This document shows positions 31,733 through 62,916 of a stretch of DNA of 64,000 nt, piece after piece. A model generated the notes under the pieces. That model worked only from the letters and a program-made list of their open reading frames with translations, was not told where the DNA came from and ran no database searches. The stretch covers positions 62,001 through 126,000 of IMG/VR virus record IMGVR_UViG_3300017991_000048, one strand, 5' to 3'. Every line of letters starts with the position of its first letter. Position 1 is the stretch's first letter. Made by a program: the position numbers and the translations under genes.

Positions 31733-32650
31733 TCAGGCAACCCCTGGTATCTCAATCCCTCGACCAGCCAAGCCCTTGACGAATTCTTTCACCGCTTTGC
31801 GAAACTTGGCTGGCTCATGGTCCTCAAGTAGTGTAAAAAACTCGCTTCTTGTGAGCCAATGGTCAAAATGCGTTCGCCGGGGCTTTTGGCCATATTCTCT
31901 TGCAAACTCATCAATCTCATCGGCTAGGTATGTATAGAATTCAGACTCCTTAAGCCTGTCAGGTTTGTCTGTATCGTCTTTGTCTGGCGAAAGATACCTG
32001 GAAGGAGTCCCTGGCTCTTCTTCCAGGTCCATGAGTGCTTTGAATACAGTTTGCCCAACGTGTTGAAGCTCATGGCGTAATATTCGTAAAAGATCACCCA
32101 AAGACGTGCGAAAAAGCTCTACTGAGTCAAACTCAGCAACTTCAAACCCATCCTGGTACATCTCCGTCAAATCCTCTACATCTACTGTTAGCCTATCAAA
32201 AACGGGTTGCCACGTGCCTTTTGTGTCAACACGGGGTCTGAAGTTCAGTACGACTTCTATTTCGTCCCACATCTCTTCTTTTTGGAGTTGAGCTATGTTT
32301 TTGCCAGGGTGCTTTCGTTTCAACTCTCTGAGATACTTCCAGCCTCTAAGATCGATGGGAAATGTCTTTTTTGCCTTGGCCTTGTACCTTCTACTGGACG
32401 ACGTGTATTTCTTACATTCCCGTTGCAACAGTGTTATGTCTACAATATGCCCCTTAGCCGGTGGCTCATCTTTATCATACTTGTCTCTGTACCTTATGGT
32501 TTCAGCCGCGTCTTCGGCAATGTTCAGTACATGAGCAGCGTAAAGTTGTCGGACCCACGCACCAATAGTTTTCATCATTGCCGGGGGAGCTTCAAAGATA
32601 CCGGCTTGTTTTGTGTACCGGTTAACAACTCTATGAGTTAGGTCTGTCAC
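31733..32650 (-). CDS. HExxH zincin-like protein with N-terminal RVVxRY motif (paralog 1)
   Basis: THRVVNRYTKQAG; RHELQHVGQ..ESEFYT. Confidence 0.6.
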   Translation of the reverse strand: MTDLTHRVVNRYTKQAGIFEAPPAMMKTIGAWVRQLYAAHVLNIAEDAAETIRYRDKYDKDEPPAKGHIVDITLLQRECKKYTSSSRRYKAKAKKTFPIDLRGWKYLRELKRKHPGKNIAQLQKEEMWDEIEVVLNFRPRVDTKGTWQPVFDRLTVDVEDLTEMYQDGFEVAEFDSVELFRTSLGDLLRILRHELQHVGQTVFKALMDLEEEPGTPSRYLSPDKDDTDKPDRLKESEFYTYLADEIDEFAREYGQKPRRTHFDHWLTRSEFFTLLEDHEPAKFRKAVKEFVKGLAGRGIEIPGVA

Positions 32651-33981
32651 CTTGTTTTACCCGGTATCTCGATTCTTCGTTTAGACAGAGCTTTGGTGAA
32701 TTCCTTGACGGCTTTTCTCCACTTGGCTGGCTCATGCTGTTTGAGCATTTGGAAGAACTCGCGGCCAGTAACCCAATTGTCAAAGAACTCTCTCCGATCC
32801 TTTTTCCGTGGATCTTTGTACTTCTTCAACGGGTGTTTAGGGAGCATCCGGGTGAAATAATCAACTTCGTCTAATAGTCTTGTGTAGAATTCTGACTCTC
32901 GAAGAGCGTGAGGCTTCCTGCCCTTTGATGGTTTTATGTCTCTCGTAAGTTCTTTAGATGGTGTCCCGGCTTCATCTTCGAGGCCCATAATACTTGTAAA
33001 TATATCCTGCCCAACGTGCTGTAGCTCATGCCGTAATGTCTCTAAAACTTCATCCAAGGCCCACCGGAAAGATTTTACGGCAGTTCCTTTTTCCAGATAC
33101 CTGCGACCTACGAAGCTCAGGCTTTGAACATCAACACGAATTGTCCTACTTCTTGGCCTCCACATGCCTTCTGACGTTTTATGAGGTTTGAAATTCAGTA
33201 CGACTTTTATCTTATCCCATCTTTTGTCTTTAAGAGTACTTTCAAAAACAGATGTGGAGTAGTGTCGTTTCAACTCTTTGAGGTACTTCCACCCTGTGAA
33301 GTCGATAGGGAAGAATTCATAAGCTTGGGTCGCGTACTCTTTTGCGGTTGATGTGTACTTGTGGCACTCTTTTTGAAGAAGTAGCAGTTCCACCATGCCG
33401 CTTTGACTTAGACCCTCCTGATCCTTCTTAAAGGAAAGATCGAGGTCATCTTCGTACTCCATTTGATGCTCTATGTGACGGCGAACGTAATCGGCAACCT
33501 CTTCCGCAGTCCCTGTTTGTCCAGGCACCGAATAATTAACAAGGAAATCGAGTTTTTTATAGCCCTCTCCTACTTCATACATGGGGAGGTAGTGTGGGAG
33601 AGGGTTGTCTGTCATTTGCCGAACTCTAGGCTCGGATGGATCTCGGTAAGTTCTGGGGATTCGACGAATTCCAATATATGAAGGTGCCCCAAAAATGCTA
33701 CTTGGCCGTTCCCACATTCTATATTTGACCGTCTTACCCTCACGGAGCTTCTTAATATCACGTTCCAAGGAAGCCAGGGCAGCTTCCATTTCCTTCTTTC
33801 TTCTTTCTACGACTACCTCACGCTCCCTTTCCATTTCTAATCTTGGCTCAAGGTCAGCCAAAACCTGACCAGCATAGACCTCTGTAACCCACTCGCTTAT
33901 GGTTTTCAACATGGCGGGAGGGGCTTCGAAAACACCGGCTTGCTTCATGTGCCGGTACACAACTCTGTGGGCGAGATCCAT
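32647..33981 (-). CDS. HExxH zincin-like protein with N-terminal RVVxRH motif (paralog 2, with insertion)
   Basis: AHRVVYRHMKQAG; RHELQHVGQ..ESEFYT; colinear with paralog 1. Confidence 0.6.
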   Translation of the reverse strand: MDLAHRVVYRHMKQAGVFEAPPAMLKTISEWVTEVYAGQVLADLEPRLEMEREREVVVERRKKEMEAALASLERDIKKLREGKTVKYRMWERPSSIFGAPSYIGIRRIPRTYRDPSEPRVRQMTDNPLPHYLPMYEVGEGYKKLDFLVNYSVPGQTGTAEEVADYVRRHIEHQMEYEDDLDLSFKKDQEGLSQSGMVELLLLQKECHKYTSTAKEYATQAYEFFPIDFTGWKYLKELKRHYSTSVFESTLKDKRWDKIKVVLNFKPHKTSEGMWRPRSRTIRVDVQSLSFVGRRYLEKGTAVKSFRWALDEVLETLRHELQHVGQDIFTSIMGLEDEAGTPSKELTRDIKPSKGRKPHALRESEFYTRLLDEVDYFTRMLPKHPLKKYKDPRKKDRREFFDNWVTGREFFQMLKQHEPAKWRKAVKEFTKALSKRRIEIPGKTR

Positions 33982-34080
33982 GTCAGTAATGTACCAGAAT
34001 AATCAGATTATTCTTATTCTCTGGACTCTGGTTGATATAATCCCAGACGTCTATCCCATAACTCTCCACTGAACAAAATG

Positions 34081-34847
34081 TCAGTCAGTCCCGTTGTCGA
34101 TTTCCCCGCTGGTAAAAAGTCTGACCGCTTCCAGGTGGAACGCACGATCAAAGACCTCAACATCGGTATTATTCCCATGTCCGTTGGCCCAGAAATAATC
34201 TCGGTAATCAATATGGGTTGGGTGAAGCGGCATAAGAAACTTGCCGTTCACGTCGCGGGTGTACTGGTACTTTTTCCAGGCAGCTTGGGCGGCTTCCTGG
34301 CCTTTTGTGGTTGGATCTTTCATAATGGCCACTCCAGCTTCACTTTGGTTATTAATTCGGGGTTAGAAGCCCACTTTGGTATCTCACGTGGCTCACACTT
34401 CGGACAAACAGGGCGGCAGCGATAACACACCAGCTTGCCGCACTGTTGACACTTTGAGCGCCGTTCGTCCGGGTGCTGTGGTGCTCTGCAATACTCGCAG
34501 TACCTTGTCCTGTCTTTTTCCATCGTTTACTCCGGTTCTTAAGGGCGTTCGACCGCCCCGATATATAGGTACCCATAACTTCCGTTGGGGCTTGCTTCTA
34601 AACGAAACTTCTTTTCCTCGAAGATAAGAGTTTCGGCACTATCTGTTGACAAACCTCTCCTCTTTATTTCTTCCCGCAACCAGGGCATTGCTACATCAAC
34701 CACCCAGTCGAGAAACGCTTTGTTGGTGTTCTCATGGGTTTGTCTATCGGCTACGATGTCTACGTAATAGTTGCTCCTGTGGCCTCCGTAGATAGCACGA
34801 GCACCCCAGTATGCTTGGTAGTCTCCCTCTATAAATTTTCCAAACAT
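34081..34847 (-). other. Three hypothetical genes (34081-34332, 34320-34523 Cys-rich, 34539-34847)
   Basis: ORF track, operon overlaps. Confidence 0.45.
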
Positions 34848-61470: not shown

Positions 61471-61576
61471 CTCAGAGATCCCTTGGTTTCAGCCATAATG
61501 ATTGGTGTTACACCGGATTTGATGGTTTTGCCATTTAATTATAGATTTTCTTGCCGTCCGGTGTAGTAGTAGTAGT

Positions 61577-62485
61577 ATGGAAATCCAATCTCTCAGCCTG
61601 TGCGTCCCGGCGAAATGCCCCAATAAATGCCCTTTCTGTGTCTCACGACAGCACCATGAAGAGTACAAGGAGGTTGCGTCAGATGACGCTTACTGGGCTG
61701 CGGTCCGGTCCCGACTGCAATTCGCCAGGGACAATCATTGTAATACCATTGTCTTGACCGGAAGCGGTGAACCGATGGCTAACCTGCCTTATCTTATTCG
61801 GTTTGGGTCTATCAACTCAACTCTTTCTTCACCGTTTCAGTGGATTGAAATCCAAACGTCAGGAGTTTATCTGGGTCCGAATATACTTTCCCTGCGAACA
61901 TGGGATATAGGAGTGGCTACGATCAGTCTGAGTCTTGCCAATATGTTCGATAGCGATGCTAACGCTGAGTTGATGGGGATACTCAAAAAGCTACGGTTCA
62001 ACACTGTCAAGCTTTGTGAATCTATCAAGGAACTGGGTTTCAACCTTCGCCTCTCATTGAATATGTCGGACATCTATAACGAGGTAGCCCCGGAAAAGTT
62101 TTTTGAGACCGCCAAAGAGCTTGACGCTGATCAGATAACATTCAGAGAGCTTTATGCTGCGGAGTCTGACTCAAAGCAAGCCGAGTGGGTAAAGGAACAT
62201 TCTTATGCCCGGAACGCTTGCAAATACATGACAGTGAAAGAGCATGTTGAACGTTATGGTCGGAGGTTAGAACGGCTTTCTTTCGGCTCTGATCGGTATT
62301 CACTGGACGGGCTATCGGTTGTTATTGACGATAACTGTATGGATAGGGAAAGGGCTAAACTTTTCTGGCCGGTACATCCTTTTCACGACTTTCCTTTCCC
62401 CACCAAGACCTTACGTTATCTCATTCTCCGGGAAGACGGCAAACTCTACACAAAATGGGACGACAAAGGTTCCTTACTGTTTTAG
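61577..62485 (+). CDS. Radical SAM protein
   Basis: CPNKCPFC (CxxxCxxC), LTGSGEP. Confidence 0.88.
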   Translation: MEIQSLSLCVPAKCPNKCPFCVSRQHHEEYKEVASDDAYWAAVRSRLQFARDNHCNTIVLTGSGEPMANLPYLIRFGSINSTLSSPFQWIEIQTSGVYLGPNILSLRTWDIGVATISLSLANMFDSDANAELMGILKKLRFNTVKLCESIKELGFNLRLSLNMSDIYNEVAPEKFFETAKELDADQITFRELYAAESDSKQAEWVKEHSYARNACKYMTVKEHVERYGRRLERLSFGSDRYSLDGLSVVIDDNCMDRERAKLFWPVHPFHDFPFPTKTLRYLILREDGKLYTKWDDKGSLLF

Positions 62486-62517
62486 GATAGTTAATTCTGT
62501 TGTATGTGCCGTAAGGT

Positions 62518-62916
62518 ATGAGCTTACCTGAACGTATAGCCGAACGGTATCAAGCCGCCGCAGCCTCGAAATACGCCGTTATCCGTAAGGAAAAAGGCAA
62601 ATACTGTGTCCGATCGCCCAACAACCCTGACTGGAATGGCGGATGTTTTGACTCAGAAGAAGAGGCCAAAAAACGGCTGCAACAGGTAGAGTTCTTCAAG
62701 TCCAAAAAGGCATACTACTTAGAAGAAGACGATCCAGGCGATCCAAACGCTGATAAAGTCGAAATGGCACACGTCGTCGCACAAGCAGCCACCTCTTCCC
62801 TAAAGAAACAAGTAGGGTACTTACGCGGTTTTCACATATCCCCTTCCGAACTTAGACGGTTTCAGAAAGTCATAGGGTCCGCTGTAGCCAAAGAGATTTG
62901 GCGAATATGGCCTTAA
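62518..62916 (+). CDS. Small protein with N-terminal RIAERY motif
   Basis: MSLPERIAERYQAAAAS. Confidence 0.55.
   Translation: MSLPERIAERYQAAAASKYAVIRKEKGKYCVRSPNNPDWNGGCFDSEEEAKKRLQQVEFFKSKKAYYLEEDDPGDPNADKVEMAHVVAQAATSSLKKQVGYLRGFHISPSELRRFQKVIGSAVAKEIWRIWP

What the first reader, a model, noticed from the sequence alone, without database searches (positions are those of the whole stretch)
31733..62916. Second tag class: N-terminal R-[VI]-[AV]-x-R-[YFH]-x-x-A(S) motif with basic-x-A sites
Seen: THRVVNRYTKQAG (32650), AHRVVYRHMKQAG (33981), THRVALRYLQS (51507), QKVASRAS and SVVQRYLSAS (52027), KRVAARFLTAS (53386), TRIVQRYLEAS (53841), ERIAERYQAAAS (62518), and internal SRVVDRF (47213). KTA, KQA, RLAS and KLAA frequently precede new modules. 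None of these proteins has a terminal LWDH tag, and they lie only in the right half of the window. Inference: a capsid-targeting or prohead-protease processing signal, analogous to the T4 internal-protein CTS, marking virion-packaged and injected proteins. That would make two separate address codes in one genome.
Basis: partly seen in the sequence, partly recalled or inferred. Interest (0 to 1): 0.7.

Follow-up and report, generated by a model that had tools for sequence, protein, structure and literature searches.

The report
Portable peptide address tags in huge phage
A 398-kb phage attaches the same short arginine-rich helix (R-V-A-x-R-Y-L-x-A) to about twenty otherwise unrelated accessory proteins; it is a real, conserved, portable tag, most likely a signal for loading cargo into the phage head, but that function has not been shown.

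Summary
R[VI][AVL]xR[YFH] occurs 22 times in the 398,071-bp genome that holds the window, against about 1.2 expected. Sixteen of these start within the first 15 residues, against about 0.07 expected. Codons vary synonymously, so selection acts on the peptide.

The motif is a 12-14-residue amphipathic helix. AlphaFold2 models it as a helix with lower confidence than the fold behind it. It is portable. Homologues elsewhere lack it, it occurs in tandem, and it swaps with other tag classes between paralogues and orthologues. On the CCA-adding enzyme it sits at the N-terminus in this phage and at the C-terminus in a 416-kb relative.

It is one of at least four N-terminal classes: A RVAxRY, B YSYDHR, C NPRKAFE, D NRWKxA. 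There is also the C-terminal LWDH tag. All but class D recur as terminal tags in the relative.

The 44 carriers are basic, fast-turnover accessory proteins. They lie in arrays and are enriched in the head-gene module. Several share domains with proteins that phages are thought to package and inject.

The best reading is a capsid cargo-loading tag like the T4 capsid targeting sequence (confidence about 0.45). Cleavage at basic-x-A sites, the "right half only" claim and the "two codes" claim are not supported as written.

The parts
31733..32650 (-). 305-aa HExxH protein carrying a class-A tag (RVVNRY encoded at 32615-32632)
   Evidence: It is a paralogue of the next gene. The family alignment A1 has invariant H318, E319, H322 and E364. 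There is no Pfam or PHROG hit.
32647..33981 (-). 444-aa HExxH protein carrying a class-A tag (RVVYRH encoded at 33949-33966)
   Evidence: In the AlphaFold2 model, residues 1-16 have pLDDT below 50 and form a short helix (3-13) ahead of the confidently modelled fold. Metagenomic homologues at 28-50% identity keep the tag, with a variable spacer before G[VI]FEAPPAM.
47348..47365 (-). Internal class-A copy (KRASS-RVVDRF) in the 268-aa ORF 47213-48019, which also has LWDH near its N-terminus
50623..51522 (-). 299-aa coiled-coil-like protein carrying a class-A tag (RVALRY encoded at 51469-51486)
   Evidence: The orthologue in the 416-kb relative G001 (66% identity) keeps the tag as RVARRF.
52027..53373 (+). 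448-aa protein with a degenerate N-terminal tag (KVASRA, 52045-52062) and an internal tag (SKTAS-VVQRYLSAS, 52690-52707)
53386..53841 (+). 151-aa protein carrying a class-A tag (RVAARF encoded at 53398-53415)
   Evidence: In G001 the homologous module is fused into a 371-aa protein, where the tag is internal (KTKTSAA-RVASRF).
53832..55127 (+). 431-aa protein (428 aa as called) with a HAD-like domain plus a C-terminal domain, carrying a class-A tag (RIVQRY encoded at 53850-53867)
   Evidence: Homologues of the HAD domain start directly at the domain, without the tag. The G001 orthologue (146 aa) lacks it too. Other homologues are fused to InPase, DUF5661 or Fic.
62518..62916 (+). 132-aa Cys-containing protein carrying a class-A tag (RIAERY encoded at 62533-62550)
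   Evidence: The G001 orthologue keeps the tag as RVAARY.
45719..46339 (-). 206-aa protein carrying a class-B tag (MYSYDHRKVA, 46319-46336). Class B is interchangeable with class A.
   Evidence: A/B swaps are seen between paralogues and orthologues.

Best explanation
The motif is the core of a portable 12-14-residue amphipathic, arginine-bearing alpha-helix. Its consensus is x-x-L-[AT]-x-R-V-[AV]-x-R-[YF]-[LQ]-x-A. It works as a short linear docking peptide and is one of several interchangeable tag classes in this huge phage and its relatives.

The most likely role is a cargo-loading (capsid-targeting) signal. The helix would dock on a component of the assembling prohead: the scaffold or core, the inner face of the major capsid protein, or the portal region. 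A large and rapidly changing set of small basic proteins and effector-type enzymes would then be enclosed in the head and delivered with the DNA. This is how the T4 capsid targeting sequence and encapsulation peptides work.

Shown here: the motif is real, selected at the protein level, helical, modelled with lower confidence than the fold behind it, portable and conserved, and its carriers are associated with the head module.

Inferred only: what the tag binds, that the carriers are in virions, and whether the tag is removed.
For: 1. Enrichment and N-terminal position. Synonymous codon variation. Upstream DNA is not shared between tagged genes.
2. Helix. AlphaFold2 models a helix at residues 3-13 with pLDDT below 50 on the 444-aa protein, and at residues 5-18 with pLDDT 57-70 ahead of a beta-barrel with pLDDT 84-90. 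Hydrophobic residues sit at positions -3, +1, +5/+6 and +8.
3. Portability.
- HAD homologues lack the tag.
- The spacer in the HExxH family varies.
- Tags occur in tandem.
- Classes A and B swap in the HExxH paralogues (genome 93733 and 94647 against 263916) and in the orthologues G000 300022 (B) and G001 11782 (A). Classes A and D swap in the paralogues 301191 and 298380.
- The CCA-adding enzyme is tagged at the N-terminus in G000 and at the C-terminus in G001.
4. Conservation. The 416-kb relative G001 (252 reciprocal best hits, median 66% identity) has classes A, B and C and LWDH. The 485-kb phage LR745208.1 (large terminase 47% identical) has four class-A tags. All 19 listed members of the 91-aa protein's family (the query and 18 metagenomic relatives), bar one truncated copy, carry the tag or a degenerate form of it.
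5. Link to the head. The gene order is portal (314227-316032), an 899-aa K/E-rich protein with a conserved internal tag, a 242-aa protein, two small class-B proteins, protease (308711-310219), an acidic Q-rich scaffold-like protein, the major capsid protein, then a cluster of eight genes, seven of them tagged. Of the 44 tagged genes, 11 lie in this 35-gene module (p = 2e-5) and none among 46 baseplate or tail genes. Thirty of 44 have a tagged neighbour (random mean 6.5).
6. Carriers resemble injected cargo. Median pI is 9.08 against 6.50 (p = 0.005). Only 13 of 44 have an orthologue in G001, against 239 of 519 others. Carrier domains include an HExxH peptidase, a Zeta-toxin-like kinase, GNAT-like, DUF5661, DUF5662, HAD and a CCA-adding enzyme. 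Relatives of these are fused to InPase, DUF5661 or Fic. These domain types belong to polyvalent proteins, which are thought to be packaged and injected (PMC5512222).
7. Precedent. [quoted passage not shown] SPN3US gp53 and gp54 share identical N-terminal 15-mers (PMC5694885).
Against: - There are no virion proteomics and no evidence of cleavage.
- The one complex prediction (capsid protein + scaffold + tag peptide) gave no answer.
- A T4-type capsid targeting sequence is N-terminal and is cut off, whereas this tag also works from the C-terminus or from inside a protein. Class A has no conserved protease-type site after it.
- At least four to six tag classes in one genome is more than one targeting route needs.
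- Many class-A genes (genome 35-155 kb) lie outside the structural modules, among early-looking small genes.
- A CCA-adding enzyme is not an obvious capsid cargo.
- Clustering near head genes is guilt by association.
Confidence: 0.45

Rival explanations
1. The tag is a docking peptide for a hub that is not the capsid, and marks a regulon of accessory proteins for a shared fate. Candidates are a phage or host chaperone (the phage encodes GroEL and a J-domain protein), a protease or adaptor (a timed degron), or an intracellular phage compartment or condensate.
For: The tag is independent of position and there are many interchangeable classes, which is typical of short linear motifs that bind hubs. 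About half of the class-A genes lie outside the structural modules. A C-terminal tag (LWDH) marks 39 small early-region proteins in the same genome, so tagging here is not only a virion matter. GroEL lies at 350965-352551 and a J-domain ORF at window 62917-63345.
Against: This does not explain the enrichment in the head module, the tagged small genes between portal and protease, or the kinship with domains of polyvalent (packaged) proteins. No candidate hub was identified.
Confidence: 0.3
2. The motif is mainly a recognition or cleavage site for the prohead (or another) protease. It would separate modules of polyproteins and trim N-termini, rather than act as a targeting signal.
For: Internal copies sit at module junctions and follow K/R-x-[TA]-[AS]. 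Class C contains an invariant A-[FY]-E, which fits the A/S/G-x-E sites of giant-phage prohead proteases. A head maturation protease is encoded.
Against: Most copies lie 4-8 residues from the start, or 3 residues from the end, of a protein, where cutting would achieve little. Class A has no conserved residue at a fixed distance after the motif. The specificity of the protease is unknown.
Confidence: 0.08
3. The helix is a membrane-binding or nucleic-acid-binding amphipathic arginine helix that places the proteins at the membrane or on DNA or RNA.
For: The tag has a four-residue pattern of hydrophobic and basic residues, shared with tags of other lineages (LLREYIRELL, ITKRQLRRIIRE). The carriers are basic.
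Against: The sequence is conserved far more strictly than generic lipid or nucleic-acid binding needs: in 33 terminal tags found with the pattern [RK][VI][AVI].R[YFH], the free choices fall as R 29 (K 4), V 26 (I 7) and Y 20 / F 10 / H 3. The hydrophobic face is small (V, A, Y, L, A). Classes B to D are not amphipathic in the same way.
Confidence: 0.08
4. The motif has no present function. It is a hitch-hiking N-terminal module spread by duplication or recombination of gene starts.
For: Tagged genes lie in arrays, and some are paralogues.
Against: Upstream DNA and codons are not shared. The tag is kept at 28-50% overall identity and between genomes with median 66% identity. It is found on non-homologous domains and at either terminus.
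Confidence: 0.04

Closest known systems
Capsid targeting sequence (CTS) of the phage T4 internal proteins, Alt and gp24
   Same: It is a short terminal peptide that is the only thing shared by a diverse, fast-evolving set of accessory or defence proteins (PMC3012670; PMC5694885). The phage has a portal, small proteins, protease, scaffold and capsid gene order. The carriers are small and basic.
   Different: There is no sequence likeness to the T4 CTS as I recall it. Here there are at least four classes rather than one. Copies also occur at C-termini and inside proteins. Class A has no conserved cleavage site after it. Packaging and cleavage are untested.
Conserved N-terminal propeptides of giant-phage head proteins (SPN3US gp53/gp54, phiKZ gp93)
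   Same: Diverged head-protein paralogues keep identical N-terminal 15-mers, which are thought to target the prohead.
   Different: Those peptides carry A/S-x-E protease sites and sit on paralogues of one family. Here the tag sits on unrelated folds, and only class C has an A-x-E.
Encapsulation peptides of bacterial microcompartments and cargo-loading peptides of encapsulins (from my own knowledge)
   Same: They are short amphipathic helices at either the N- or the C-terminus, joined by a variable linker, portable between enzymes, and they dock on the inside of a protein shell. Encapsulin shells have the HK97 fold, like phage capsids.
   Different: No microcompartment or encapsulin operon is present here, and the shell would be the virion capsid. 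Binding was not shown (the complex prediction gave no answer).
Polyvalent proteins and the phage P1 Dar system (Iyer et al. 2017, PMC5512222)
   Same: They hold the same kinds of effector domain (zincin-like HExxH peptidase, InPase partners, kinases, GNAT), which are thought to be packaged and injected.
   Different: There the domains are chained into one giant protein that is carried in through MuF, portal or DarA-type modules. Here each domain is a separate gene with its own short tag.

Membership tests
T4-type capsid targeting sequence (CTS) | A short (10-20 aa) terminal peptide conserved among otherwise unrelated proteins of one phage | tested here: met
   The carriers have different or no Pfam/PHROG families.
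T4-type capsid targeting sequence (CTS) | Strictly N-terminal, ending in a prohead-protease site and removed on maturation | tested here: inconclusive
   Most copies are N-terminal, but C-terminal and internal copies exist. Class A has no conserved site after it. Class C has an invariant A-[FY]-E. Removal cannot be tested with these tools.
T4-type capsid targeting sequence (CTS) | The phage encodes a prohead protease and a scaffold/core beside the portal and capsid genes | tested here: met
   Portal, large terminase and head maturation protease have PHROG hits. A 399-aa acidic Q-rich protein lies next to the protease. The capsid protein has a weak Phage_capsid hit, E 4.5e-4, below the Pfam cut-off.
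T4-type capsid targeting sequence (CTS) | The tag is sufficient and necessary for incorporation into proheads, and carriers are present in virions | not testable with these tools
   This needs virion proteomics or reporter fusions.
Encapsulation / cargo-loading peptide | An amphipathic helix at either terminus, separate from the cargo fold | tested here: met
   AlphaFold2 models, the hydrophobic pattern, and N- versus C-terminal placement on CCA-adding enzymes.
Encapsulation / cargo-loading peptide | Binds the inner face of the shell protein | tested here: inconclusive
   Complex prediction with capsid protein + scaffold + tag scored 0.08 against a mark of 0.34, reported as 'no answer'. This is not evidence either way.
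Tat (twin-arginine) signal peptide | Adjacent RR followed by a hydrophobic h-region and a cleavage site | tested here: not met
   The two arginines are four residues apart, and the next 15-20 residues are polar or charged.
Polyvalent-protein effector modules | Carrier domains belong to families found in polyvalent proteins | tested here: inconclusive
   DUF5661 is found in a class-C carrier, and homologues of the HAD carrier are fused to InPase + DUF5661 or to Fic. An HExxH...E signature is present, but no zincin fold match was found.

The most novel reading that the evidence does not exclude
Huge phages may run a multi-code peptide addressing system. In this genome at least four N-terminal tag classes and the C-terminal LWDH tag mark 83 of 563 ORFs (about 15%). 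Other lineages use their own codes: LLREYIRxLL and ITKRQLRRIIRE on a 260-kb contig, and TLRSKLIRLAHxNPxLRPxLLPLL in LR745208.1. Different tags could send proteins to different destinations (prohead interior, other assemblies, or turnover). That would be an unrecognised protein-sorting layer in phage infection.
Probability: 0.25. Interest if true: 0.9.

Novelty: new variant of a known kind. Interest (0 to 1): 0.72.

Why it matters
- If the tag loads proteins into the capsid, a simple sequence rule would predict the injected-protein repertoire of uncultured huge phages. Here that is about 44 proteins, many of them enzymes that could disarm host defences or repair RNA.
- It would give a ready-made handle for packaging foreign proteins.
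- It would show that cargo-loading logic like the T4 capsid targeting sequence has diversified into several interchangeable codes.
- Even if the target is not the capsid, tagging about 15% of the ORFs with a handful of terminal peptides would show that huge phages route their proteins by short peptide codes.
- My searches of open papers for eleven tag strings or fragments of them (classes A-C and E, both L184 tags, the LR745208.1 tag and LWDH) found nothing relevant; classes D and F were not searched.

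Tried and rejected
- DNA- or RNA-level motif: rejected. Codons vary synonymously (Arg as CGA/CGT/CGG/CGC/AGA/AGG, Val as GTN/ATH) and upstream regions are unrelated.
- Tat or other secretion signal: rejected. There is no hydrophobic region.
- Complex prediction (capsid protein + scaffold-like protein + first 30 residues of window 53386-53841): no answer, score 0.08. This is no evidence either way.
- Fold of the HExxH family: Foldseek against the PDB gave no match with E <= 1e-3 (best 0.34), VIA-align gave Z <= 6, and a profile search of PDB sequences found nothing. 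'Zincin-like' rests only on the invariant HExxH...E.
- The prohead protease has no sequence match in the PDB.
- The Atlas search of the C-terminal part of the 899-aa head protein gave no lead.
- Cultured relatives with proteomics: none found. There was no megablast hit in 'phages'. The HExxH protein, the C-terminal domain of the HAD carrier and a tagged protein from L184 have no tblastn hit in 'phages'. The nearest isolate is Tunturiibacter phage Tunturi_5 (large terminase 28% identical), which shows no excess of the DNA pattern.
- Literature: searches for eleven tag strings or fragments of them (classes A-C and E, both L184 tags, the LR745208.1 tag and LWDH) found nothing relevant; no string for class D or F was searched.
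- Herpesvirus-like Y-L-x-A|S cleavage and L/I-x-E cleavage: considered, but no consistent site was found.

Full report
**1. Setting**

The window is bases 62,001-126,000 of a single 398,071-bp virus record with 48% G+C. A crude greedy ORF set has 563 ORFs.

The first ~140 kb hold small genes on both strands. From 140 kb onward almost every gene is on the minus strand. That part holds:
- DNA polymerase, helicases, ligase, ribonucleotide reductase and GroEL;
- a baseplate and tail block at about 174-238 kb;
- a collagen-like tail fibre gene at 286-293 kb;
- a head module at about 296-325 kb.

No cultured close relative exists. Relatives found:
- G001, the 416,539-bp IMG/VR contig UViG_3300028840_002431, with 252 reciprocal best hits at median 66% identity;
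- LR745208.1, an uncultured 485-kb phage whose large terminase is 47% identical;
- more distantly, Tunturiibacter (Acidobacteriota) phage Tunturi_5, at 28%.

**2.

| Scope | Strict hits | Expected (shuffles) | N-terminal hits | Expected |
|---|---|---|---|---|
| Window, 128 ORFs | 7 | 0.11 | 6 | 0.014 |
| Genome, 563 ORFs | 22 | about 1.2 | 16 | about 0.07 |

- The reversed pattern gives no N-terminal hit.
- Codons at the motif vary freely among synonyms, and the upstream DNA of tagged genes is unrelated. Selection therefore acts on the peptide, and copied gene starts do not explain the pattern.

**3. Anatomy of the tag**

- Thirty-three terminal copies from three genomes give the consensus x-x-L-[AT]-x-R-V-[AV]-x-R-[YF]-[LQ]-x-A.
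- The copies were collected with the pattern [RK][VI][AVI].R[YFH], so position 4 is Arg by construction; within the allowed sets the split is R 29 / K 4, V 26 / I 7, and Y 20 / F 10 / H 3.
- The free positions also show preferences: Leu at -3 in 13 of 33 copies, A/T/P/S at -2 in 27, Leu at +6 in 15 and Ala at +8 in 19.
- Hydrophobic residues at -3, +1, +5/+6 and +8 form the stripe of an amphipathic helix.
- AlphaFold2 models the tag as a helix in both proteins folded:
  - residues 3-13 of the 444-aa HExxH protein, with pLDDT below 50, ahead of a confidently modelled body;
  - residues 5-18 of a 91-aa protein, with pLDDT 57-70, ahead of a Tudor/KOW-like beta-barrel with pLDDT 84-90.

**4. The tag is a portable module**

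- Homologues of the HAD-like domain of window 53832-55127 start directly at the domain. The G001 orthologue also lacks the tag.
- In the HExxH family the tag is kept down to 28% overall identity, but it is separated from the family's own G[VI]FEAPPAM start by 0-6 variable residues. More distant members lack it.
- Tags occur in tandem.
- Tags of different classes replace one another at the same place:
  - The HExxH paralogues at genome 93733 and 94647 have class A (RVVxRY), and the third paralogue at 263916 has class B (YTYDRR).
  - Paralogues 301191 and 298380 share the segment KKKVPPEFLEQQKK but carry class A and class D.
  - Orthologues G000 300022 and G001 11782 carry class B and class A.
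- The tag does not need the N-terminus:
  - The CCA-adding enzyme of this phage (Pfam PolyA_pol + HD) has it on a 44-residue N-terminal extension.
  - The CCA-adding enzyme of G001 has it as its last 13 residues.
  - A 129-aa proline-rich protein (genome 52-441) also ends with it.
- Internal copies sit at module junctions and are conserved. One example is the 899-aa K/E-rich protein encoded between portal and protease. Another is a G001 protein that fuses two modules which are separate genes in the window.
- I found no evidence that anything is cut there.

**5. It is one of several codes**

An unbiased search for peptides shared by N-termini of otherwise dissimilar proteins recovers six clusters in this genome. 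The class counts below come from a separate pattern scan with start-codon correction.

| Class | Peptide | Proteins |
|---|---|---|
| A | RVAxRY | 18 |
| B | M-x-YSYDHR / TYDRRY | 11 |
| C | M-x-NPRKAFEEAL | 11 |
| D | MDHNRWKxA | 4 |
| E | MEKIANPQEL | 4 |
| F | a further small cluster | 3 |
| LWDH (C-terminal) | K-T-LWDH-L | 39, within the last 30 residues |

- The LWDH count compares with 0.16 expected. The carriers are mostly small proteins encoded at 22-104 kb, and the codons again vary.
- G001 has classes A, B and C and LWDH (26 LWDH copies). LR745208.1 has only four class-A tags and no LWDH, plus a tag of its own on five proteins.
- An unrelated 260-kb contig was reached through a homologue of the C-terminal domain of the HAD carrier. 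It has a run of genes starting with M-x-LLREYIRxLL (nine by the unbiased clustering) and four starting with M-x-ITKRQLRRIIRE. One of these proteins contains a Fic domain.
- Terminal peptide tagging of gene arrays therefore recurs across several huge-phage-sized contigs, each with its own peptides.

**6. Who carries the tags**

- The 44 N-tagged proteins (classes A-D) have median length 152 aa and median pI 9.08, against 6.50 for other ORFs (p = 0.005).
- Thirty of the 44 have a tagged neighbour. Random sets average 6.5, with a maximum of 20.
- Only 13 of the 44 have an orthologue in G001, against 239 of 519 other ORFs (p = 0.04).
- None of the core replication or structural proteins I annotated carries a tag.
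- Recognisable carriers are:
  - two HExxH proteins, with invariant H, E, H and a downstream E;
  - a Zeta-toxin-like P-loop protein, a weak GNAT-like protein, DUF5662 and the CCA-adding enzyme;
  - DUF5661;
  - the HAD-like protein.
- Relatives of the HAD-like protein are fused to InPase + DUF5661 or to Fic.
- Zincin-like HExxH peptidases and InPase are hallmark domains of polyvalent proteins, which Iyer et al. argue are packaged into virions and injected (PMC5512222).

**7. Link to the head**

Read in the direction of transcription, the head module is:
1. two unknown large genes;
2. two class-A small genes (321335, 320934);
3. a 205-aa gene;
4. the large terminase;
5. small genes;
6. the portal;
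7. the 899-aa K/E-rich protein with the internal tag;
8. a 242-aa gene;
9. two class-B small genes (92 and 81 aa);
10. the head maturation protease;
11. a 399-aa acidic, Q-rich scaffold-like protein;
12. a 212-aa gene;
13. the 292-aa capsid protein;
14. after an inserted methyltransferase-like gene and two small untagged genes, a cluster of eight genes, seven of them tagged (D, A, D, B, one class-E-like, A, B, D).

- G001 keeps this order, but its post-capsid cluster has four genes, all class A.
- From memory, the order portal, small core proteins, protease, scaffold, capsid matches T4 genes 20, 67, 68, 21, 22 and 23.
- Eleven of the 44 tagged genes lie in this 35-gene module (hypergeometric p = 2e-5). 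None lies among the 46 baseplate or tail genes.
- The capsid protein is the most constrained protein of the pair of genomes. It is 99.3% identical, the top of 252 orthologue pairs, with the next at 91.7%. Its codons show 114 synonymous against 2 non-synonymous differences.
- Such constraint would suit a protein with many binding partners, but it is not specific evidence.

**8. Interpretation**

Taken together, the evidence best fits a cargo-loading (capsid-targeting) peptide. This is the logic of the T4 capsid targeting sequence, where diverse internal defence proteins share only that sequence (PMC3012670). It is also the logic of the conserved N-termini of SPN3US gp53 and gp54 (PMC5694885). 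In its freedom of position it is closer to encapsulation peptides of protein shells (my own knowledge). I put this at about 0.45.

What is not shown: the receptor, virion presence and processing.

The main rival (about 0.3) is a docking motif for some non-capsid hub. It is favoured by the multiplicity of classes, by the many tagged genes outside the structural modules, and by the LWDH tag on small proteins encoded in the early-looking region. Cleavage-only, membrane or nucleic-acid binding, and 'no function' readings are less likely, for the reasons given under rival explanations.

**9. Novelty**

The kind of signal (a terminal targeting peptide on phage accessory proteins) is known from T4. 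The sequences, the several interchangeable classes, the use of either terminus and the scale are new as far as my searches reach. I therefore file it as a new variant of a known kind, with function unproven.

The ORF set is crude, so the counts may shift by a few with proper gene calling. The enrichments are too large for that to matter.

Noticed in passing
Whole genome, mostly genome 22-104 kb. In the window, for example ORFs 40536-41120(-), 41180-41677(+) and 42054-42494(+).: A C-terminal K-T-L-W-D-H-L tag lies 6-13 residues from the end of 39 small proteins (median 141 aa). Only 0.16 are expected. Codons vary synonymously. G001 has 26 such tags and LR745208.1 has none. One protein (genome 36201-36884) has both a class-A N-terminal tag and LWDH.
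   Followed up: partly
Window 45719-46339(-). Genome 300022, 301699, 310226, 310480, 381881, 382320, 385224, 388915, 263916 and 26134.: Class-B N-terminal tag, M-x-YSYDHR-x-x-A or TYDRRY. It is interchangeable with class A between paralogues and orthologues. Two carriers lie between portal and protease.
   Followed up: partly
Genome 135807, 249901, 251198, 267774, 267956, 273204, 273491, 274268, 371205, 388186 and 388518.: Class-C N-terminal tag, M-x-NPRKAFEEAL, sometimes in tandem and conserved in G001. Its invariant A-[FY]-E fits the A/S/G-x-E sites of giant-phage prohead proteases. One carrier is DUF5661.
   Followed up: partly
Genome 298380, 299548 and 302493; window 9332-9568 (weak). Genome 25225, 26709, 33291 and 300664.: Two further N-terminal peptide families: class D (MDHNRWKxA) and class E (MEKIANPQELAxEL).
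   Followed up: no
L184 (ENA ERZ23495206, MIZU16-1 scaffold_23, a 259,983-bp contig), positions 1093-13995.: An unrelated large contig has a run of genes starting with M-x-LLREYIRxLL (nine by the unbiased clustering) and four starting with M-x-ITKRQLRRIIRE. One of these proteins has a Fic domain. LR745208.1 has five dispersed proteins starting with M-T-TLRSKLIRLAHxNPxLRPxLLPLL.
   Followed up: partly
Genome 305834-306712 (L040), compared with G001 12804-13682.: The 292-aa capsid protein is 99.3% identical between genomes whose median orthologue identity is 66%. There are 114 synonymous and 2 non-synonymous codon differences, so purifying selection is extreme and recent exchange does not explain the identity.
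   Followed up: partly
Window 30477-31092.: A tRNA cluster. ARAGORN calls tRNA-Ile(gat), tRNA-Ile(aat) and, at 30617-30693, a tRNA with a four-base anticodon 'tccg' of unassigned identity. The long ORF 30455-31525 across this cluster is probably spurious.
   Followed up: no
Window 61577-62485(+) and 62518-62916(+).: An ORF whose sequence looks like a radical-SAM enzyme (my reading only, not checked with a tool) lies directly upstream of the class-A-tagged, Cys-containing 132-aa protein, which has a weak sub-threshold Albumin_I_a hit. The pairing was not examined.
   Followed up: no
Genome 145226-145501 (L006) and homologues P0087-P0104.: A 91-aa basic protein consists of a class-A helix followed by a Tudor/chromo/KOW-like beta-barrel (Foldseek TM about 0.5). 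Nearly all 18 metagenomic homologues keep the tag or a degenerate form of it. One has a second copy at its C-terminus. In other contigs the module heads larger proteins, including a 2233-aa protein with a topoisomerase IB domain in L058.
   Followed up: partly
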